A stretch of DNA of 63,874 nt from the NCBI RefSeq assembly GCF_016433145.1, contig NC_058131.1, positions 289,125,886 to 289,189,759 of the forward strand. The letters run 5' to 3'. A program made the translations under genes and the position numbers. A model generated the notes under the pieces. It was given only the letters and a program-made list of their open reading frames with translations, was not told the DNA's origin and did not search any database. Shown here piece by piece: positions 5,411-22,125 of this stretch. Position 1 is the stretch's first letter. Each line of letters opens with the position of its first letter. This DNA comes from Gracilinanus agilis (taxonomy: Eukaryota).

Positions 5411-6169
5411 CCCTCCTCCTTGAACACTCATACACCCCTGAGTGAAATAAGGAGAAGCAAGAGAACCATTTATTTACTTTGTAAGTTGAGAGGGAAAAAC
5501 CAAGGGGGAGGGGGGAGAGGGACAAACCAAGCAGGGGAGAGGGATGGGGAGTATCAAAAGGGAGGGAAATAGAGGGAGGAGGGAATTTAATAGACCTTAA
5601 AGAAAAATAAGAGGGGAATAAGAAGGGAGGTAGTGGGAAGGAAAGTAAAATAAGGGTGGGCAATAGGGGGACTGATCAAAAGGAAAACACTGGTATAGAC
5701 AGAAATAGTGAAAGAAGAAATGACAGGATTAAAAGAGGAAATCAAAATGCTGGGAAATACACAGGTGGTAATCATAACTCTGAATGTGAATGGAATGAAC
5801 TCACCCATAAAATGTAGTGGATAGTAGAGTGGATTAGAAACCAAAATCCTTCCATTTGTTGTCTACAAGAAACACCCATGAGGCAGATAGATACACACGG
5901 GGTAAAGGTAAGAGGCTGGAGCAAAATTTATTGGGCTTCAACTGAGAAAAAGAAGACAGGAATCACAATCATGATATCTGACAAAACCAAAGTAAAAATA
6001 GATCTGATTAAAAGAGATAGGGAAGGTAATTACATCTTGATAAAAGGCAGTATAGAAAATGAAGAAATATTAGTATTCAAAATGTATGCACCAAATGGTA
6101 TAGCATCCAGATTTTTAAAGGAGAAACTATTGGAGCTTAAGGAGGAAATAAATAGTAAAACTATACTAG

Positions 6170-6358
6170 GGGGCAGCTGGGTAGCTCAGTGGAGTGAGAG
6201 TCAGGCCTAGAGACAGGAGGTCCTAGGTTCAAACCCAGCCTTAGCCACTTCCCAGCTGTGTGACCCTGGGCAAGTCACTTGACCCCCATTGCCCACCCTT
6301 ACCACTCTTCCATCTATGAGACAATACACCGAAATTAAGGGTTCATAAAAAAAAAAAC
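6170..6358 (+). mobile_element. SINE1_Mdo-type SINE inside L1 ORF2
   Basis: TSD aaaactatactag and an A-tail. Confidence 0.92.
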
Positions 6359-7900: not shown

Positions 7901-8042
7901 GGCTTCACAATATTGTAGAAGGCATCTATAACCCCAAAAAGATTAAGAAACCCTTCTTTATACCAATATGGAACTTGCCCTGTGTCACTAGGGAGAGGAG
8001 TAGTTGAGGGGAAGTGTTAGCTAAGATTTTGTAGGCTGAGTG

Positions 8043-8059
8043 CTTTCTCTCTCTCTCTT

Positions 8060-8123
<64 letters not shown>
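8043..8123. repeat. (CT)n microsatellite
   Basis: About 80 bp of ctct with a few ttt interruptions. Confidence 0.97.
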
Positions 8124-8125
<2 letters not shown>

Positions 8126-8452
8126 TAGTTATGTTTTAATTTTTATGAGTTACATGTAGAAGCAATTTTTTACAATTGTTTTCTGACATTTTGTGATCCA
8201 AATTCTCTCCCTCCTCTCCCCTCTCCCCAGATGGTAAATAATCTGAGATAACTTATACTAGTGCTGATTGGCAACACAGACTTCCATGTTTCTCATGTCA
8301 GGACAGAAGACACATATTGTGCATACAAGAGAAAGCTCAGGAAGGAAAGAAAATGAAAAAAGAGATGCTTTCATTTGCACTCTGACTCTGCCAGCTTGAG
8401 GGCCCTCTTCTGGTCAGTGGGAAGACCTGCACCTTTTAAGATGCTCTCCTAA

Positions 8453-11224: not shown

Positions 11225-14200
11225 GTAAGTGGGGCCTCCATATCCCCCAGCCTAAGATCTTCACCTTCCACCAGAAAGTCTGAGGGGAGAACTGAGCCTC
11301 ATCCTTCTTTCTCTCCCTGGACTTTGGGGAAAACATGTCTTCAAAAGAGGTCAGGAAGCCCAGGCAGCCACAGGCTACTGGTCCAGATGACAGGTCAGGC
11401 AGGGCAGATTTAGTACACTGAGAATCCCCTAGCCATCTTCCCAAACCCAAGTCACTTAAGTTCTTCTCAACTGTCAAGTGAGGAGACTGTTCTTCTAAGG
11501 CTCTTTCTAGCTCTAAGCCTCATGGATTGAGGAACATGTTAGGAACATGGCTATCTGGGGAGAAGGGGCAATTTCCCCAAAGTGTCCCCAATTCTCACCT
11601 GCCCTTCTCAACATAGAAGCAGTGTGCTGGAATTGGAGCTGAGGGACTTGGGTTCATCTTCCAGCTTTGGCATCTAAAATGCAAGTGACCATGATCACTT
11701 TTCACCTGTAAAACGGGGCACTGGAAAGTAGGACTCTCAGTTTCCTTCCCTTTCTAAGTCCATGATTCTCTTTCTGGGATTTTTCTTGGAATGAGAGATT
11801 AGAGTCATCTTGGTCTTCTTTTACCATGGAGGAGAGAGGCTCCTGGGGTTTTAGGACCTGGAGCATCTGCCCTCTTTTGCCTTTTGGGGGCACCAGGCGG
11901 CATGAGGTCTCAGCCCCAGTTTTCTACTTCTCTGGCTTTGACTGTTTTTGTTCAGGGATTCCAGAGATTTTGGATCTGGGTGGCAATGAGCCTGCCAAGG
12001 TGAGGATAGAAGGAGCCACAGCCAGAGGGGCAACCCTGGTCCTTGGGCAGGGGCTCTAGGATATGAAAGGGCAGAGCTTATGATAGAGGTGGAAGAACTT
12101 CAGATTTGGATGAAAGGACCTGGGATCAAATTTTTGCACAGCTTGTTTCTACTGGGACCCAGTTTCCTCCTAATCTATAATATGGGGGGCTAAGGTGTTG
12201 AACTCTGTTGGTCCTTAAGGTTTTATTTAGCCCCAAATTCTACAGGCCTTTAAAAGAGGACTCATTCTTTAGTGTATCATGCCTCCACCCCCACCCCTTC
12301 CCTCCTTGTCCTCCTCCCCCTTCTTTGAGGAGTAACTGGAGCCTGGGCCCAGCTGTTCTTACAGCCTTGGCCTAAGAATAGCCAAGTCCTCTGGCCTAGG
12401 GTAGGACGTGGTGGGGGGAGGGGAGTTGGGAAGGGTGGACGAAAGGGTCCTATGATTCCTCATGCTCTGGAGGGTGGAGATTCTGGGTATAGGACTAAGG
12501 TTAGACTTCTCAAATTCCTTTAACAGACAATAGCAATAAATGAATAAATTCCTGGAGCTAGAAAGGACTTTGGAGATCTAGTCCAATTCTTTCATTTTTA
12601 CAGATGAAAAAACTGAGGCCCCATATTAAGTCAATGTCAAAACTGGAACTCACACTCAAGTCTCTAGACTCCAATTCCAGGACTTTCCCCACTAAACTAA
12701 AATGCCTCTCGGAGCCTCACAAAAGCCCTGGCAGGAACATGGGATTATCCCCATTTGGCAGAGGTGTTAACTGGGATCCCTTGAGGTTAATTGAGGTTAA
12801 TCGTTTTAACTAATTAGACCCCATTAAGGCAGGATGGGATAGTGGATATGTACTGAAGTCAGAAGTCCCGGGTTCAAATGTCAGCTCTCCCACAATATTT
12901 CCTTATGATTTTGGGCAAATCACGTAATCTCTCAGTTTCCTCTTCTATAAAATAAGGGGGTTAGGATTCCATGATCATGAGGACCCTTTCAACTCTAATA
13001 TTGTCATGTTTTTTAATAGTCAGCAGCTGAGATCTCCCAGTTTTAATCTTTACTCCCTCAGCCTGCCTCAGCTTAATGGATGAGGAAGTGGTCGGGATGA
13101 GAACACCAGTTAGTTCTCTCTGTTCTGCTGTGTTAAAGAACAGGGCTAGGAGTATGGCTTGCCTGGGCCCCATGAGGAGAAGGCTGTATGTGCCCTTCTG
13201 AACAGACGAATCCTTTGGAGTCCTAGGATGGCATTAGTATTGGGTGGGGACAGAGTGGTGGTTGTGGTGAATTTTTATATAAATTCCTCACAACCGTGAA
13301 CTAAAGACATGGCAGGACAAAATGTCAGATGCTGCCAAGCTGGGGAAGACTTTGAGTATAGGCCCAGAGAGACAGTACATCTGTTGTCCAAGGACTGGTT
13401 GACCTACTAAGTAAGCAGAAATGTTATCATCAAAAGACTGGTCACCGGAAGGGGATTCTGGGGGCCACAGAAACTCATAGGGTCATAGAAAGGACCTTGG
13501 AGACCATTTCATCCAATACCCTCCTTTTACTGATAGGGAAATAGGGAGCCAGAAAAGTGAGCAAGCCCAAGTGAGCAGTAAAATAGGGACCTAGACCTGG
13601 GTTCAACAGTGGGATTAGCTCTTGGCTCTCCCCACCTTTTTTGGGAATCCCTGTTTCCCTTTCTTCTTCCCTTTCTCCTCCCCGAGCATTGGTACCTGAC
13701 TTCCTTTGCATCTTGCAGACGGACCAGCAGGCAGAAGCCCGGTCCTTCCTCAGCGAGGAAATGATTGCTGGTGAGTGTGTGTCCTGGCGGGTGGGCAGTG
13801 GAAGGGACTATTTTTGCCTGGGGAGTAAACTTAAGGCTGTGACAACCCTGAGGATGGCATATCCTCCTTGTTTATTACTCTGCTACTCCTCCCCTCAGAG
13901 TTCAAGGCTGCCTTCGACATGTTTGATGCTGATGGTGGTGGTGACATCAGCACCAAGGAACTGGGCACAGTAATGCGGATGTTGGGCCAGACACCCACCA
14001 AAGAGGAGTTGGATGCCATCATAGAAGAGGTGGATGAAGATGGTGAGCTGGGGCTCTCCTGTGAGTGAATTGTGAGCACTGGGTGACTGCATCTTTGCAG
14101 GGCTCTGATGCTCACTCTCCCCAATCTAGGCAGTGGCACCATCGACTTTGAGGAGTTCTTGGTCATGATGGTGCGCCAGATGAAAGAGGATGCGAAAGGG

Positions 14201-16100
14201 AAGAGTGAAGAGGAGCTGGCCGAGTGTTTCCGTATCTTTGACAGGTCAGGCGTGGTGCCCATTGGGCCAGGATTCCCTGGGAAGGTATTTGTGGAGATGC
14301 CCAGAGTTTAGGCTTGGCTCCAGTGGGGCTGCCTGGGGAAGGTATATGTGTATACATGGGGGATTGTGGGGGGCTGGAAGAGAAGGGGCTGGAAAGGAAG
14401 TAGAGTGACTGTGGCTGGGCTGAAGTGGGCTGAGTAGTCTTGGGTCCCAGGTCTTGGAGGATGTGAACCAAATGATCTTTAAGGGTTCTTTGAGCACCCA
14501 ATCCTTTGGTTTCCTGCAATATGTGTGTGGGCAGTTCCCATGTCCCAGCTTCTCGAGGGGCTACCTGAATGGGCACCTGATTTCCTTCCCCTATAAAGGA
14601 ATGCTGATGGTTATATTGATGCTGAAGAATTAGTGGAGATCTTCCGGGCTTCAGGAGAACACGTGACAGATGAAGAGATTGAGTCCTTAATGAAAGATGG
14701 AGACAAGAACAATGATGGCCGAATTGACTTTGATGGTGAGGGCATGGTTACTTCCCTTCTCTGGGGAAGCAGCTGGACAAGACAGGGTTAGGGTGGGAGA
14801 ATATAGGGGAAGAGAGGAATGGGGGAAGAGGAATTGAATAGATATCTGAGGACAGACAGGGAATGGGAAGCTCAGAGACTGGAATTCCAATCCTAGCCCT
14901 ATCTCCCAACTTGCTCTGTGACTTGGGAAAAGTCATTTTCTTTCTCCAGGCTCATTTTTGTTTTTTTGTAAAACGAGAGGAGTTGGAATTAATTTCTTTC
15001 TTTTTTTTTTTTTAAACCCTTACCTTCCATCTTGGAGTCAATACTGTGTATTGACTCCAAGGCAGAAGAGTGGTAAGAGTAGGCAGTGGGGGTCAAGTGA
15101 CTTGCCCAGGGTCACATGGCTGGGAAGTATCTGAGGTAGGACCTCCCATCTCTAGGCCTGGCTTTCAATCCACTGAGCTACCCAGCTGCCCCCTGGACTT
15201 AATTTCTAAGGTGCCTTCCAGCTGAGACATATACACACTGACAAACAAATGTTTTCACTGCAAGGAGCTTTCAGTCTAGAAATGGGTCCCAGAGTGATGG
15301 AGTGTGAAGGCTACTGGATTTGATAATGTGGGTCTGAGCTGGGCACTGCCACTTACTGTCAGACCTGGCTGGCAGGGGTCGGTCCTGAGGCAAATGAGAC
15401 AGAGATTGAGTTATGCAGCAAAGCTTTCTTGTGAGAAAGGAAAGGGGGACAGAGGAACAGAGAGCAAGGAGGGGGGAGCCTGCAACCAGTAGATGGCTAA
15501 AGGTTCCCACTGGGGTGGAGAAGGAGGCAATCTTTTATAGGGTGGTGGTCTGGGATGAGGTAATCTGGATTGTCTCTGTTGGGCAAAGTTGGGGTACTGG
15601 TGTCCAGATGATTGGATAGCCCTAAGCGGGCTGGCTTTGGGGGCCGGGGCTTGAATAGTCCTTAGTACGGTACAGATGGTATAAGTCCAGAACATCAATC
15701 CATCATGGATTTGTCAGGTCACAGCATGGGAAGTCACAGTGAAGTGGAACTACTTGCTTTGTTCTGGAGTTCCAGCAGGGGCAAGGGAAGGGGGCGCTAA
15801 CAGAGGAAAGGGAGTTTTGGTCCCATCATCTATCACTTACTAAGTGCCCTAAGGAGAATCACTCCTCTTTGGGCCTCAGGTTTTCTGTAAGATGAAGGAA
15901 TTGGACTACTTTGTCTAAGCTCCTTTAGGGATCTAAATTGTATGAATTGATAAACCTGGGCAAGCCAGGTCTGTGTGGGCAGTGCAGTCCGGCTCTGTGG
16001 CCTTCCCCTCCACTGTGTTCACACTCTTAACTTCTCTGATTCCTCTCCTCTCTTCTTTATCCTTGCAGAGTTCCTGAAGATGATGGAAGGTGTGCAGTAA
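11222..16100 (+). CDS. TNNC2: Troponin C, fast skeletal muscle (160 aa). Coding exons 11222-11224, 13719-13770, 13899-14042, 14130-14244, 14599-14735, 16069-16100
   Basis: All introns are GT-AG. Exons of 3+52+144+115+137+32 = 483 nt give [41 protein letters not shown]...[15 protein letters not shown], with four EF-hands. Exon 1 ends gtcaccATG|gtaagt. AATAAA at 16312-16317. Confidence 0.98.
12280..12440. promoter_or_regulatory. Candidate TNNC2 intron 1 muscle enhancer
   Basis: Clustered CCACCC boxes (12285-12296), E-box CAGCTG (12350-12355), MEF2-like CTAAGAATAG (12372-12381) and a G-rich box. Confidence 0.5.
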
Positions 16101-17012
16101 GAATCCAGCACTGTTCACAGCCCCTCCATCCTTCACTTCCAAGGGTTCAGCCAGAGATTCAACTGGCTCCTCTCTCCCTGAGACCATCCAGGGCTCCCCA
16201 AACTATTCCTCCTCATCTTCCACCCTCTGCTTCCCTGTCCCTCCCTCATGTGATGTTCCCCTTCCACTTCTCCCCTCCTGGTCTATTCCTGATGTGTAAA
16301 TGTCATTCACCAATAAAGGAAAAAGATTTCACTCAGAGTGGGGCTTGGGGCTCGGGGCTTCTTGATCATCTTCTAGACAGAGAGAACACTGGGTTTATCT
16401 AATGACTAAAGGGTTCTGCCCTTTGCTAGGTGTGTGACCCTGGGCGAGTCCCGATCTCTCTCTGCTTCAGTTTGCTCATTGGCAAGGTGAGATCAATAGC
16501 ACTCAGGGGGCCGTGGGGAGGATAACGCAAAGTCCTTTGCAAATCCTAAAGGCTTTCTTTATAATAGAAATGTTAGCTGTTGCAAGGAGAGCAAGTTGAG
16601 GTTTCATGCAAGGAAAACTCCTCCGGGTTGGCGCCATCCCCAAGCTCCGGCTCGGGCATCAGCAAGCCGAAGGGGGCCATCTCTGGAGTTCTCCGAGTCC
16701 TCTAGGGAATCACTGATCCCAGAGTTGTTGAAGGGTCTGGACTCCACAGCTAATGTCAGGAGGGTGGGGGCAGCAGGGAGGGGGAAGGGGAGGGAAGCAG
16801 GCGAGTCCGACCAGCGGGCGTAGAGGGAACTGGTGGGCCGGCGCTTTGCGGCTGTCCCCGCCTTCTACCCCTCCCCTCCCCCCTCCTCCACCCTCCTGGA
16901 TGGGTAGGGAAGGGGCTGGCCTCTGGCAAGGGCGGAGGCTGGAAGCGGGAGAGCCTGGGCTTTGCGACTCCTGGCTGAGGCCGAGGCCAAGATCGTCCAG
17001 AGTGTGGGAGGC

Positions 17013-18096
17013 ATGCGTGGCGGGGGGCCGGGGGAGAGGGCCCGGGAAGCCCGGGAGGCTGTGGCCGAGTGCAGGGCAGCGTACGAAGCGCTCAACAGGT
17101 TCACCGCGAGCTACAGGCAGTTGGTGCTGGGAGTGGGCAGCTCGGCGGACGGGAGGAGGCTGCGCCGGGCTCTGGAGGAGAGCGGTCGCAGGGGCTTCGA
17201 GCTGAGTCTAGGTGAGCGGACCGGGCGCGGGGGCTGATGGAAGGGGTAGGAGGGGGCGAGGCGCGGAGCGGGGAGAGGGTAGCGGGGCTTCTGAGCCTCC
17301 GAATGGGAACGGCGCGGCGTTTGGAACAGACACGGAGTTCGAATCCGGACTGCTGCCTGTTGCCCGGCTTCCCCTTCTGTAAAAGGAGAGTGGACCACAC
17401 GGCCTTCGTAGGATGCCTGGCCACACCTGCTGGTCCTTCTGGTCGTAGGACCCTAGCGGTTCTTACAGCCTAGGAAACCGAGGCCATTTGTTAAGTTCTC
17501 CCCGTGGCCACAGAACAACGCACCCCCCCCCCCCTGCCCTCCCCTTCCCTGACTGTTGCTGCCCCTGCTGTTTGCCTTCTCTCCCCCTCTCTCCCCGTCC
17601 CCAACCAGGCCTTCGGAACCAGCTTTTGGCCGAGCTCACAGAACCGGGAACTAGGCAGGAGGAAGAGGTGAAGATGGAGCTGGAGCGGATCTGGGTGCTA
17701 TGTCTGTCTGCCCTGGAGATTTTCCTGCAGGATCTGGGTCGGGCCCATGACCTCAGCCAGCTCTTCCCCATGCCATCTCCAGCCCCAGGGATCCAGTTGG
17801 TCAATACTGGGGTCACATCCTTTGGGCCTAAGGGATGGAGCCTGAGAAGGCCCAGTGGGAAGGCCTCTGAAAGAGCTGGGGAGCTGCCTGAGGAGCTGGC
17901 CCAGTGGGGGCAACGCCTGGAAGAGATGCTCTTGGAGATGGAGACCAAGGTCAACGTACCAGTGTGGAGTGTTGAGGCCACAGTGGGTGGTCCTGGAGCA
18001 GAAGAACCAAGCCCAGAGGGCTCAGCTGGGAGGAGTCCTCAGGGCTGCTGTGCCCAGGCTCCCCCTGGGCTGCAGTGGCATTGTGTAGTGGCATGA
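17013..18096 (+). CDS. RGS9-binding protein (R9AP/RGS9BP)-like paralogue, 228 aa, two exons (17013-17211, 17609-18096), C-terminal CaaX
   Basis: ATG at 17013 is the first in-frame ATG after an upstream TAG (16905). Donor cta g|GTGAGC and acceptor pyrimidine tract...ccaacCAG|gc are phase 1 and join the ORF with no stops (199+488 = 687 nt). Blocks match remembered R9AP: ECRAAYEALNRFTASYRQLVLGVGSSADGRRLR vs [40 protein letters not shown] vs EFERLWV; LFP...LVNTGV vs AFP...LVRTGV; METKVNVPVWSV vs MEMKVNVPRWTV. It sits in a CpG-rich segment. Confidence 0.9.
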
Positions 18097-18860: not shown

Positions 18861-21800
18861 TCAGGGCTCTTGGCTGGTCACCTGCTTCATGTAGGTTTCC
18901 AGCAGGTACTTTTTAAAGGCTGGGGAGAGAAGAGGATGAGTAAGTAAGCAAACTGGCTTTGGTAGGTTCGAGAAACATGTAATCCAATAGTTTTAGAAAT
19001 GGAGTAATCTGGCTATGATCTTCTCCAGTTTCTTTCCTGATCCTAGACTGGTCCTTTTCCCTTTTGCCCATTTCTAAGGGAGCTGCCTACAGTAAAGGAG
19101 TCATGTCTGTATAGTCTACCTTTGCCCTATGAGCTAACCAGATTAAAGTCCAGGTGTACACACCAAACTCCCTCCCCTAAGGTTCTTCTATTCCATTTCC
19201 TTAAGAGGATACACATTTTTGTTAAAAGCTCTCCTTGGATTTTTGTGACAGCTATTCTTAAAATACCAGTGGTAAGCTTAATTATTTTATCTAAATTGCC
19301 CAAAGTTCTCAAGGAGAAAGAGTGAAATCTGTTTAGGGCAGGGTTTTTTCACTTTAAATCCTCTAGGGCCATGTTAGCAAAGACATGGCATTCATGCCCC
19401 GGCACGCCCGAGGGGGCTGCTGCATCCTGCCTCTACACCTGGGGACAATTTCCACATGCCCTGCCCCTTGTACAGAGGCCCAATGTGAGCTGTCCTCCCT
19501 CCACTTTCTGGGGTAATGGTGACGCCTCACAGGCATACTGAAGGTGCAGTCTGGGCAGGAGATCTTTTAAAAGGTTTGCCAACACTGCTGTAGGAGAAAG
19601 ATTGGGGTTCCTGTTTTAGCAGAGGACCTACCTGTAGGGTTTGTCCAAAGCTCAGCAGCATGTGTGTTCAATGGGCTATCAATATTGGGTTCTGTAGGTG
19701 GAGACAACATGTTAGGACAGAAGGACCTGAGAAAGAACTGTTAAGGAAATTGGAGATCTGTGGGAACCAGGTTCAGAAGTGTTAGTAATGGTTAGACTAA
19801 CTTAGCTTCTCACATTCTATGAGTCACAAGATGATAAAAGAAATTAGGTGGCTCAATAGATAGAGATCCCAGAGGTCCTGGGTTCAAATCTGGCCTCATA
19901 TACATCCTAGCTGCGTTAACCTGGGCAAGTCACTTAACCCCCATTACCTAACCCAAATCACTCTTCTGCTTTGAGACCAACATACAGTATTGATTTTAAG
20001 ATGGAAGGTAAAGATTTTGGGGGAAAAGATGGTAGAAGGAAATGATGGGAAGGGTAACCCTAAAACTTCAGAGGAAAGTCCAGGGTGGGGCAGTGGAACA
20101 TCCCCACAAGCTAGCAGGCATCACCTCCCAGCAGGCTCTGGATAGAGAGTAGGATGGTCCTGACATCATACAGAGCTGACCACTTGTCTTTGAGAATGTC
20201 CAAACAGATATTGCCTTGGGTGTCCACATTAGGATGGTAGCAGGGTGTGACAAATTTCACTGTGGGAGCATTATATGGATAGCCGCTGGGGAACTCCAGA
20301 GAAAGCTTGTACCTCAGATCTTCATATACCTGGATGAAGAAGCACCCAAGTAAATTAATGAGTGGACTGGAATGAGGGATATTTAAGCCACAGAAGATGT
20401 TCTGGTACAGTGGGAAGAACACTGTAAAAGTCCAAAGGCTTAGTTTTAGTTCCTGTTTTTTTCTGGTTCACGGAAAAATCTGAGCTTTAGTTCTTCATCT
20501 ATAAAATGGGGATAAACATAGCATAAACATAACTATCTGGTTCACAGAATTGAGGAGATGATCAATCAGTTGAGTTAAAGGATGTGAAAGTTTCTGAATT
20601 GCAAATTTTATTTTATTTTAATAAATATTTTCCCATGATTCATGTTATCTCCCTCCCCCCTCCCGGAGGGACAAGCAACTGAATTGCTGAATTGCACATT
20701 TTAAGAGATCATTCACTATTTTGGGTGGGGGTTTTCTCTATCTCCTCAAGGGGTTCCCCTCACTTAGCCCATCTGTTTATCGGTATATACAAGTCAAAGC
20801 AAACTCCATTGTGTCCAATTCATTTTCAATCCTTGATACTCACAGTCCCAGCAGCACCATGGATGGTCCCGACCCATTTGAAGAGATTGTCTGACTCTGG
20901 GAAGGCAGAAATTCCTTTATCTCCAGACATCTGCAGAGGAAGAATAATCAGGGTGGGGTTGCTGAACAAGTAGCCTTAGATGATCCCAAGGGTCCCTTCC
21001 AGAATCCTGTGCCTCTAAAGGGGAGGGAGAATAGTTGGGCGAAGAGGCAACAGTCCAAGATTTGCTTATAGCTGATCCCAATAAAATACAATCTGACTGA
21101 TTAGGGTGTTTTTTTGAAGAGTGGGGTGGGGTGGTATAAACAGGCGGAGCTGGGAGATCAGCAACCAGCCCTCCTGGGGAAGGCTACTGATTAAGAGTTG
21201 GTGTTATAAAATCCCACATTTTCTCCAGGTGCTCCCCTCTAAAAAATGGGAGTTAAATTCGAGGTCCCTTTTCAGCTGAGAATCTTTCCCTCTATGAGGG
21301 AGGAAGAGCTGTGGGTAGGTTTGGGTTGGAGCCAGGGAGATCCGAAGGGGCCTCCTGGCTGCTGGGCTGACCACGGGAGGCACTCACCATTAGGGTCATC
21401 AATTCCTGTTGTAATCTGCGGGAAATCCGCAAGGGAGAGGGTTCGGTTACTGAGCATTAAGACTAGAACAAACTTACCCCACTATCCTGCTCTCCCCGCA
21501 CCCAGTCTGACCTTTGGCTGATGGAGTATTCAACCCTCACCCTAACCTCCAGCTCCAGCCTGCCTTCCTCTTCCCCTCCCTCCATCGGCCTACCCGAGTC
21601 TGCCTCCCTCTCCTCTCCCCCCACCTCTCCAGCCTGTTCTCCAATCTGACTCCCCAATCTGCCCTCCCTGCTTCCCCCCCACCCCCCCCACTCTCCAGTA
21701 TTCTCTCCTCCCTCCCCTACTCCTCATCCTGCCCTCTCTGCCACTCGCTCTTCGCCTTCCAGGCTGAAGGAATTCTCACCTCTTGCCCACGGACCCTCGG

Positions 21801-21883
21801 GCCGCGCCCGCCCCAGGCTCAGCCCCCTTACGGGAGGCGGCGGCGGCGCTAGCAGCAGCCGGGTCGCGGTTCTGTGAGGCCAT
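18861..21883 (-). CDS. UBE2C: Ubiquitin-conjugating enzyme E2 C (180 aa). Exons 21780-21883, 21388-21415, 20844-20930, 20125-20329, 19632-19691, 18861-18919
   Basis: GT-AG introns; 543 nt in total. Translation [24 protein letters not shown]...[36 protein letters not shown]...[20 protein letters not shown]...KQVTSQEP*. The catalytic Cys is intact. AATAAA on the minus strand at 18655-18660. Confidence 0.98.
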
Positions 21884-21939
21884 CGGGGACAGGAGATAAA
21901 GGAAGAGAAAACTCTCTGGCGGTAACTGCGGAGCTCCAG

Positions 21940-22125
21940 GCCCGCCCGCCCGCGTTTGAATTGTAACCCTCCGGCGGCGTCAGCCAATCGGAGATACGCT
22001 TGGGTTTGATCCAGCCAATGAATCACTCCGATATGCCTCGTCACCTAGAAACAGGCAAACCCACCCACCAGAGCGACAGGAATGGTCAGCAGTGGCTCGC
22101 TTCCAAGAAGACGATTGGTAGCTGA
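21940..22125 (-). promoter_or_regulatory. UBE2C: UBE2C G2/M-type promoter (CDE/CHR and NF-Y boxes), CpG island
   Basis: CHR TTTGAA at 21955-21960 next to a GC-rich CDE-like tract. CCAAT boxes at 21984 and 22015 (31 bp apart), plus ATTGG near 22115. Confidence 0.75.

What the first reader, a model, noticed from the sequence alone, without database searches (positions are those of the whole stretch)
17013..18096. Intact two-exon R9AP/RGS9BP-like gene between TNNC2 and UBE2C: a candidate third anchor for R7 RGS proteins
Seen: a Kozak-context ATG, one phase-1 GT-AG intron and an uninterrupted 228-aa ORF (R9AP is about 235 aa). It has four separate blocks of similarity to R9AP, spanning the N-terminal helical bundle and the KVNVPxW motif. 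Established: mammals have two recognised anchors for RGS6/7/9/11-Gbeta5 complexes, R9AP (transmembrane) and R7BP (palmitoylated). I recall no protein-coding gene between UBE2C and TNNC2 at human 20q13.12. Inference: this is a distinct, probably ancient paralogue kept in marsupials and perhaps lost or unannotated in eutherians. It may target RGS GAP complexes in a different tissue. The ORF track splits it into two unrelated-looking ORFs.
Basis: partly seen in the sequence, partly recalled or inferred. Interest (0 to 1): 0.9.

Follow-up and report, generated by a model that had tools for sequence, protein, structure and literature searches.

The report
Marsupial R9AP-like gene, already catalogued
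The two-exon gene between TNNC2 and UBE2C is real, intact and under purifying selection, but it is the marsupial copy of the vertebrate "R9AP-like" (RGS9BP3) gene described in 2018 as missing from almost all placental mammals, so it is a known gene whose function is still untested.

Summary
ATG 17013, a phase-1 GT-AG intron (17212-17608) and stop 18094-18096 give a 228-aa protein.

It is not new. NCBI already annotates it as "RGS9-binding protein-like" in Monodelphis (97-98% identical), koala and bilby. Lamb et al. 2018 (PMC5795056) describe three vertebrate R9AP genes: R9AP, R9AP-B and R9AP-like. They list the opossum and Tasmanian devil R9AP-like proteins, note one coding intron, and note absence from placentals except the degu.

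My own tests agree:
- It sits in the R9AP-like clade with 100/99 support, apart from canonical R9AP and R9AP-B.
- The order SNX21-TNNC2-gene-UBE2C-DNTTIP1 is the same in degu and turtle, and TNNC2 and UBE2C flank it in three marsupials.
- The intron position and phase match in three marsupials and a turtle.
- dN/dS is 0.09-0.16 among marsupials.
- The elephant locus holds a relic with three in-frame stops.

The predicted fold is a syntaxin-like three-helix bundle plus a fourth helix, and the nearest structural matches are R9AP, then R7BP, then syntaxins. There is no transmembrane helix. The tail carries CC and a terminal CaaX box (CVVA). A cysteine at -4 recurs in this clade from skates to marsupials.

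Anchoring of R7-RGS/Gbeta5 complexes is inferred by homology only. The scan's note s1-173138 flagged the same tail on this window.

The parts
16800..17400 (.). CpG-rich, GC-rich island over the 5' end of the gene; likely promoter region. A 5'-UTR exon may lie upstream.
   Evidence: GC 0.66-0.72 and CpG o/e 0.53-0.93 in 200-nt bins. Lamb 2018 reports an extra 5'-UTR intron for this gene family. The exact transcription start was not testable.
17013..17211 (+). Coding exon 1: 66 codons plus the first base of Gly67. It encodes helix 1 and most of helix 2 of the three-helix bundle.
   Evidence: The exon end (...ELSL|G) is identical in Monodelphis, koala and bilby.
17212..17608 (+). Phase-1 GT-AG intron, 397 nt.
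   Evidence: The position and phase are the same in Monodelphis (385 nt), koala (373), bilby (246) and the turtle Emydura (738). Intron divergence matches dS.
17609..18096 (+). Coding exon 2: the rest of Gly67 to Ala228, then TGA. It encodes the end of helix 2, helix 3, the FP...TG motif, a disordered linker, the SNARE-like helix 4, the KVNVPVW motif and the tail.
18046..18051 (+). Cys213-Cys214 pair, a candidate palmitoylation site.
   Evidence: A CC is kept in Monodelphis, koala, bilby and turtle and in many fish and bird orthologues. The modification itself is inferred.
18082..18096 (+). C-terminal CaaX box CVVA plus stop, a candidate farnesylation signal standing where canonical R9AP has its TM helix.
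   Evidence: It reads CIVA in the other marsupials, and Cys at -4 is present in 20 of 43 R9AP-like clade rows, none of which has a TM tail. No hydrophobic helix is present: the highest 19-residue KD mean is 1.26 in Monodelphis, koala and bilby, against 2.4-2.9 in the R9AP and R9AP-B representatives P0014, P0015, P0020, P0021, P0025 and P0032.
13835..16100 (+). Upstream neighbour TNNC2: EF-hand exons, stop at 16098-16100, AATAAA at 16312.
20114..21979 (-). Downstream neighbour UBE2C, convergent with the gene. The listed coordinates cover only the UQ_con exons recognised in the window.
   Evidence: A UQ_con gene sits at the same place in the orthologous loci.

Best explanation
This is the functional marsupial orthologue of the vertebrate R9AP-like gene, also called RGS9BP3 (zebrafish name zgc:109913). 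R9AP-like is one of three ancient R9AP paralogues. The protein has a syntaxin-like closed fold: a three-helix Habc-type bundle with a fourth, SNARE-like helix packed on it, followed by a disordered tail. Canonical R9AP ends in a transmembrane helix. This protein ends instead in a Cys-Cys pair and a CaaX box (CVVA). The most likely mechanism has two steps. First, the tail is farnesylated and then palmitoylated, which holds the protein on the cytoplasmic face of a membrane. Second, the helical domain binds the DEP/DHEX module of an R7-family RGS protein (RGS9, 11, 7 or 6) in complex with Gbeta5, concentrating that GTPase-activating complex at the membrane as R9AP and R7BP do. Shown here: gene structure, orthology, synteny, purifying selection, fold, absence of a TM helix and conservation of the CaaX. 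Inferred: lipidation, the RGS partner and the tissue.
For: Gene model and intact ORF. Named orthologues in Monodelphis, koala, bilby, degu and turtle. The R9AP-like clade is monophyletic at 100/99 and holds the window protein, while R9AP and R9AP-B fall outside it: (quick tree). Clade members are named in bird, frog, teleost, coelacanth, sturgeon and skate. Synteny TNNC2-gene-UBE2C. Same intron position and phase. dN/dS is 0.085-0.157 among marsupials, with bootstrap upper bounds at or below 0.25 and dS equal to intron divergence. Identity to canonical R9AP is 34-39%. The AF2 model has pLDDT 81 and pTM 0.71, with four helices above pLDDT 90. Foldseek ranks RGS9BP proteins first (E 1e-10 to 6e-8), then RGS7BP (about 4e-6), then syntaxins. 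The best PDB matches are Sso1/Sso2/syntaxin-1, and the profile hits the syntaxin-12 Habc domain at 6e-10. Positions nearly invariant across the whole family, invertebrates included, are kept in the Monodelphis orthologue used as reference: G42, D46, L50, R51, L72, F118, T132, G133, W185. Literature: Lamb et al. 2018, PMC5795056.
Against: There is no expression or splicing evidence for any marsupial. [quoted passage not shown] All four R7 RGS genes persist in placentals that lost this gene, so it is dispensable there or has another partner. The tail lacks the polybasic tract that helps R7BP bind membranes. The degu gene model lacks a CaaX. 23 of the 43 clade rows have other C-termini; these may be faulty models, but that was not checked.
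Confidence: 0.62

Rival explanations
1. The protein is functional and conserved but is not an R7-RGS anchor. As a lipid-anchored syntaxin-like protein it would bind another partner, for example acting in membrane trafficking or SNARE regulation. The R9AP resemblance would then reflect shared ancestry only.
For: The fold and profile matches to syntaxins are real. The paralogues diverged before the vertebrate radiation, as shown by the long branches and argued by Lamb 2018. Placentals lost the gene without losing any R7 RGS. No functional data exist.
Against: Sequence and structure are much closer to R9AP (34-39% identity; Foldseek E 1e-10) than to any syntaxin (11-17% identity; E 4e-4 or weaker). 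The family-wide invariant motifs are retained.
Confidence: 0.3
2. It is a decaying or non-functional copy whose open frame survives by chance in this species.
For: The gene has been lost in almost all placentals, and the elephant relic carries stops. No Pfam family matches.
Against: The ORF is intact, with conserved start, splice sites, stop and CaaX, in four marsupials spanning the American-Australian split. dN/dS is 0.09-0.16 with upper bounds at or below 0.25, while introns diverge at the synonymous rate.
Confidence: 0.03
3. It is simply the canonical RGS9BP (R9AP) orthologue, relocated.
For: NCBI's product name contains 'RGS9-binding protein', and some orthologues in the clade are named without '-like'.
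Against: It falls in a separate clade at 100/99 support. It has one coding intron, whereas R9AP has none. It has no TM helix. The opossum has its own canonical R9AP, XP-007474849, listed alongside R9AP-like XP-007475029.
Confidence: 0.01

Closest known systems
R9AP-like / RGS9BP3 (zebrafish zgc:109913; NCBI 'regulator of G-protein signaling 9-binding protein-like'), as defined by Lamb et al. 2018
   Same: Same clade, same single coding intron, same TNNC2-UBE2C neighbourhood in amniotes, and the same CaaX-type tail. It is 97-98% identical to the annotated Monodelphis protein.
   Different: Nothing of substance. This is another didelphid's copy, with dS 0.115 from M. domestica.
R9AP (RGS9BP), the transmembrane anchor of RGS9-1/Gbeta5L in photoreceptors
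   Same: 34-39% identity over about 200 aa. It shares the three-helix bundle, the SNARE-like helix, and the GxSxDxxxLR, FP...TG and VNVPxW motifs.
   Different: R9AP is intronless, lies at another locus and ends in a TM helix. This protein has one intron and a Cys-rich CaaX tail instead.
R7BP (RGS7BP), the palmitoylated anchor of R7 RGS proteins in neurons
   Same: Same overall fold (Foldseek E about 4e-6). Membrane attachment is by lipid on C-terminal cysteines rather than by a TM helix.
   Different: Identity is only 17-19%, and none of the listed C-terminal tails among the profile hits at E<=1e-3 looked like R7BP (not all hits were named). R7BP uses a polybasic tract plus two palmitoyl cysteines and has no CaaX. 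This tail has a CaaX and no polybasic tract.
Syntaxins (Sso1/Sso2, syntaxin-1, -7, -12) in the closed conformation
   Same: Habc-type bundle with a fourth helix folded back. The profile hits the syntaxin-12 Habc domain at E 6e-10.
   Different: Identity is 9-17%. It has no TM anchor, and no evidence was sought here for SNARE-complex function.

Membership tests
R9AP-like (RGS9BP3) orthogroup | Falls inside the R9AP-like clade, apart from R9AP and R9AP-B | tested here: met
   Careful ML tree: the clade has 100/99 support and the window protein pairs with Monodelphis at 98/96. The quick 95-row tree agrees.
R9AP-like (RGS9BP3) orthogroup | One intron within the coding region (Lamb 2018: R9AP 0, R9AP-B 2, R9AP-like 1) | tested here: met
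   A single phase-1 intron at the Gly67 codon, with the same position and phase in three marsupials and a turtle. The rule is quoted.
R9AP-like (RGS9BP3) orthogroup | Conserved position between TNNC2 and UBE2C in amniotes | tested here: met
   Window; degu and turtle; Monodelphis, koala and bilby.
R9AP-like (RGS9BP3) orthogroup | [quoted passage not shown] | not testable with these tools
   This needs transcript data. Only a CpG-rich region upstream was seen.
R9AP/RGS9BP family (broad) | Significant full-length sequence similarity to R9AP | tested here: met
   BLASTP E 2e-24 and 4e-20 at 34-39% identity. The profile search retrieves R9AP, R9AP-B and invertebrate homologues.
R9AP/RGS9BP family (broad) | N-terminal three-helix region plus a heptad/SNARE-like helix | tested here: met
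   The AF2 model of the Monodelphis orthologue has helices 6-40, 48-77, 84-117 and 151-179 with pLDDT above 90. The top structural hits are RGS9BP, RGS7BP and syntaxins.
R9AP/RGS9BP family (broad) | Binds the DEP domain of an R7 RGS protein and tethers RGS-Gbeta5 to membrane | not testable with these tools
   No complex prediction or binding assay is available here, and there is no published test for any R9AP-like protein.
Canonical R9AP (RGS9BP orthologue) | C-terminal transmembrane helix | tested here: not met
   The highest 19-residue hydropathy mean is 1.26, and it lies in helix 3. No helix is modelled in the tail. The R9AP and R9AP-B representatives P0014, P0015, P0020, P0021, P0025 and P0032 score 2.4-2.9 at their C-termini.
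Canonical R9AP (RGS9BP orthologue) | Intronless coding region | tested here: not met
   One coding intron. The rule is quoted.
R7BP (RGS7BP) | C-terminal polybasic tract followed by two palmitoylated cysteines, with no CaaX | tested here: not met
   The tail ...SAGRSPQGCCAQAPPGLQWHCVVA has a CC but no polybasic run, and it ends in a CaaX. The definition of the R7BP tail comes from established knowledge (Drenan et al. 2005, PMC2171691 title and abstract).
R7BP (RGS7BP) | Sequence-level membership | tested here: not met
   Identity is only 17-19% in the structural alignment. No R7BP-type tail was seen among the profile hits at E<=1e-3.
CaaX-prenylated proteins | Cys at -4 with aliphatic residues at -3 and -2 and a permissive last residue, at the true C-terminus | tested here: met
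   CVVA-stop; CIVA in the other marsupials. Cys at -4 is present in 20 of 43 clade rows. Actual prenylation was not tested.

The most novel reading that the evidence does not exclude
The whole R9AP-like clade, from skates to marsupials, could be a prenylated and probably also palmitoylated R7-RGS anchor. That would be a third mode of attachment beside the TM helix of R9AP and the polybasic-palmitoyl tail of R7BP. Such a protein could be delivered by prenyl-binding chaperones, as several phototransduction proteins are. Placentals would have lost this mode by pseudogenisation. In the papers searched I found no statement that R9AP-like proteins carry a CaaX box instead of a TM helix. Lamb 2018 discusses the TM segment for R9AP only.
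Probability: 0.45. Interest if true: 0.5.

Novelty: already known. Interest (0 to 1): 0.22.

Why it matters
R7-family RGS proteins set the shut-off speed of G-protein signalling in photoreceptors and neurons, and textbook accounts based on placental mammals list only two anchors. Most other vertebrates, marsupials included, keep extra R9AP paralogues whose function nobody has tested. The gene is not a discovery. The useful residue is a clean and well-supported marsupial gene model, evidence of strong purifying selection, a dated example of loss in a eutherian (the elephant relic), and the observation that this paralogue appears to use a lipid tail rather than a transmembrane helix. Together these give a concrete, cheap hypothesis for anyone working on opossum, zebrafish or Xenopus vision.

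Tried and rejected
- Pfam scan of both exons found no family. The R9AP/R7BP family matched no Pfam model.
- phmmer of exon 2 against PDB sequences gave nothing meaningful. The family profile found only syntaxins, so no R9AP or R7BP chain was detectable by sequence in the PDB copy.
- A literature search for 'zgc 109913' found no papers.
- The poly(A) signal scan was uninformative. The nearest + strand AWTAAA after the stop is ATTAAA at 19142.
- Motif strings recalled from memory for the UBE2C C-terminus found nothing in the window, so the 3' end of UBE2C is not mapped here.
- A simple two-exon reconstruction failed for the degu, because NCBI's model uses a third exon.
- Canonical-RGS9BP identity was considered and rejected (tree, intron, no TM, second opossum gene).
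- Pseudogene status was considered and rejected (dN/dS).
- R7BP orthology was considered and rejected (17-19% identity, different tail).
- The 20 R9AP-like rows in the careful tree were chosen partly for being full length and ending in CaaX. The unbiased count is therefore the one from the 95-row tree: 20 CaaX, 23 other, 0 TM among 43 rows.

Full report
**Observation**

- ATG at 17013, with G at -3 and C at +4. It is the first in-frame ATG after an upstream stop.
- Exon 1 is 17013-17211.
- The donor GT is at 17212. A long pyrimidine tract precedes the acceptor AG at 17607-17608.
- Exon 2 is 17609-18096 and ends in TGA.

The spliced frame is 687 nt and encodes 228 aa without an internal stop. 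The intron is phase 1 and splits a Gly codon. The mechanical ORF list does break the gene into two ORFs, 16962-17237 and 17488-18096.

The neighbours are as claimed. TNNC2 EF-hand exons lie on the + strand at 13835-14788. Its stop is at 16098-16100 and an AATAAA sits at 16312. UBE2C exons lie on the - strand at about 20114-21979. The 5' end of the gene sits in a CpG-rich island, with GC up to 0.72 and CpG o/e up to 0.93.

**Identity**

Exon 2 alone retrieves NCBI proteins named "regulator of G-protein signaling 9-binding protein-like":

| Species | Identity to exon 2 |
|---|---|
| Monodelphis domestica | 97% |
| koala | 90% |
| bilby | 89% |
| degu (Octodon degus) | 59% |
| turtle (Emydura) | 50% |

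A profile of these proteins, searched against 1.84 billion representatives, finds 148 relatives. Source names identify four groups among them:
- canonical R9AP: caecilian, hagfish, lamprey, desman, echidna;
- R9AP-B: newt, seahorse;
- R9AP-like: rhea, tailed frog, arowana, coelacanth (as zgc:109913), sturgeon and paddlefish, skates, turtles;
- invertebrate homologues: annelid, snail, damselfly, scorpion.

In a careful maximum-likelihood tree rooted on the invertebrates, the R9AP-like rows form one clade with 100/99 support. The window protein sits next to Monodelphis (98/96), inside a mammal clade with the degu (100/99). R9AP and R9AP-B lie outside. A 95-row quick tree agrees. The Monodelphis orthologue is 34-39% identical to canonical R9AP over about 200 residues, with E 2e-24 and 4e-20.

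**Orthology by position and structure**

The order SNX21, TNNC2 (+), this gene (+), UBE2C (-), DNTTIP1 (-) is found in the degu and the turtle. TNNC2 and UBE2C also flank the gene in Monodelphis, koala and bilby. Rebuilding the annotated proteins from genomic DNA shows the same phase-1 intron at the same Gly codon in Monodelphis, koala, bilby and the turtle.

**Selection**

Pairwise Nei-Gojobori estimates among the four marsupial sequences give dN/dS of 0.085 to 0.157. Bootstrap upper bounds are at or below 0.25. Against the turtle the ratio is about 0.2-0.3, with saturated dS. Intron divergence equals dS: 0.116 against 0.115 versus M. domestica. So the coding sequence is constrained while its intron drifts. 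The same figure shows the window comes from a didelphid other than M. domestica.

**Already known**

Lamb, Patel, Chuah and Hunt (Open Biol 2018; PMC5795056) state the following:
- vertebrates have three related genes, R9AP, R9AP-B and R9AP-like;
- these genes have zero, two and one coding introns respectively;
- R9AP-like has a further 5'-UTR intron;
- almost all placentals have only R9AP;
- the degu is the single placental shown to have R9AP-like.

Their supplementary alignment lists "R9AP-like Opossum XP-007475029" and "R9AP-like Tasmanian devil XP-003759057", beside the canonical "R9AP Opossum XP-007474849".

**Loss in eutherians**

An elephant protein named "troponin C, skeletal muscle" (P0120) came up in the profile search because its model splices TNNC2 onto an R9AP-like exon-1 relic. 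In the elephant locus, the exon-2 homologue (L006:13512-13928) aligns well but carries three in-frame stops. This is a unitary pseudogene at the syntenic place.

In the degu, NCBI's model leaves exon 2 for a third exon. Plain read-through of exon 2 ends ...FWVCCRET-stop.

**Fold and mechanism**

An AlphaFold2 model of the Monodelphis orthologue was built on a 45-sequence alignment and has mean pLDDT 81 and pTM 0.71. It shows helices 6-40, 48-77, 84-117 and 151-179, nearly all above pLDDT 90, a disordered linker and a disordered tail.

| Search | Result |
|---|---|
| Foldseek, Swiss-Prot models | RGS9BP proteins first (E 1e-10 to 6e-8), then RGS7BP (about 4e-6, 17-19% identity), then syntaxins |
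| Foldseek, PDB | best matches are closed Sso2, Sso1 and syntaxin-1 |
| family profile, PDB sequences | syntaxin-12 Habc domain at 6e-10; no R9AP or R7BP chain |

Positions nearly invariant across all 45 family members, invertebrates included, are kept. They lie in the loop after helix 1 (G42, D46, L50, R51), after helix 3 (F118, T132, G133) and after helix 4 (W185 of VNVPxW).

It is established that R9AP binds the RGS9 DEP domain and tethers RGS9-Gbeta5 (summarised). From that I infer this protein also docks an R7 RGS-Gbeta5 complex. No tool here could test binding.

**The tail**

No hydrophobic segment is present. The highest 19-residue Kyte-Doolittle mean is 1.26, and it lies within helix 3. 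The R9AP and R9AP-B representatives P0014, P0015, P0020, P0021, P0025 and P0032 reach 2.4-2.9 at their C-termini.

The protein instead ends ...GCCAQAPPGLQWHCVVA-stop. That is a Cys pair at 18046-18051 and a CaaX box at 18082-18093. The other marsupials end CIVA, and the turtle ends CC...CCTAS.

In the 43-row R9AP-like clade of the quick tree, 20 rows have Cys at -4, 23 have other ends and none has a TM tail. Many of the 23 are short or odd gene models, but I did not verify them. The 20 rows used in the careful tree were picked partly for being complete and ending in CaaX, so they should not be counted as an unbiased sample.

By the usual CaaX rules, a final Ala or Ser directs farnesylation and a final Leu directs geranylgeranylation (the Leu and Ser/Ala rule as stated for GRKs). 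Lipidation is inferred and not shown. The scan's note s1-173138 flagged this same tail on this window. A search for papers holding both R9AP and CAAX gave none that describes this for R9AP-like.

**Transcription elsewhere**

A 999-nt contig from run SRR13269349 holds an uninterrupted skate R9AP-like CDS. It is therefore a spliced transcript. No such evidence was obtainable for marsupials.

**Verdict**

This is a real, intact, selected gene. It is the marsupial R9AP-like/RGS9BP3 orthologue, already annotated and already discussed in the literature. Its biochemical role is open. The most useful new angle is the lipid tail in place of a TM helix.

Noticed in passing
L006:9142-9321 and L006:13512-13928 (African elephant, GCA_030014295.1): An R9AP-like relic lies between TNNC2 and UBE2C. 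The exon-1-like stretch is spliced into NCBI's elephant 'troponin C, skeletal muscle' model XP_023405639.1. The exon-2-like stretch has three in-frame stops. This is a unitary pseudogene and a likely mis-annotated TNNC2 isoform.
   Followed up: partly
L001:18165-18640 and 18930-19019 (degu): NCBI's degu R9AP-like model skips the natural end of exon 2 for a third exon (…CRSKG). Plain read-through ends …FWVCCRET-stop and keeps the Cys pair. Intron 1 is about 8 kb there, against about 0.4 kb in marsupials.
   Followed up: partly
window 16098-17013: The TNNC2 stop (16098-16100) and its AATAAA (16312) lie only about 700 nt upstream of the R9AP-like ATG on the same strand. Read-through or shared regulation is conceivable, and the elephant fusion model hints at read-through transcripts.
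   Followed up: no
window 5818-6207 (+): A 130-aa open frame resembles the endonuclease part of a LINE-1 ORF2, so a retrotransposon fragment lies upstream of TNNC2. This is my reading of the translation and was not searched.
   Followed up: no
window 7929-8135 (-): A simple (GA)n-type repeat reads as an ER/RE dipeptide run in one frame.
   Followed up: no
whole window: dS of 0.115 and intron distance of 0.116 from Monodelphis domestica show the genome is a didelphid other than M. domestica.
   Followed up: partly
L007:132-863 (Logan SRR13269349): A 999-nt contig holds an uninterrupted skate R9AP-like CDS, so it is a spliced mRNA. The orthologue is transcribed in a cartilaginous fish.
   Followed up: no
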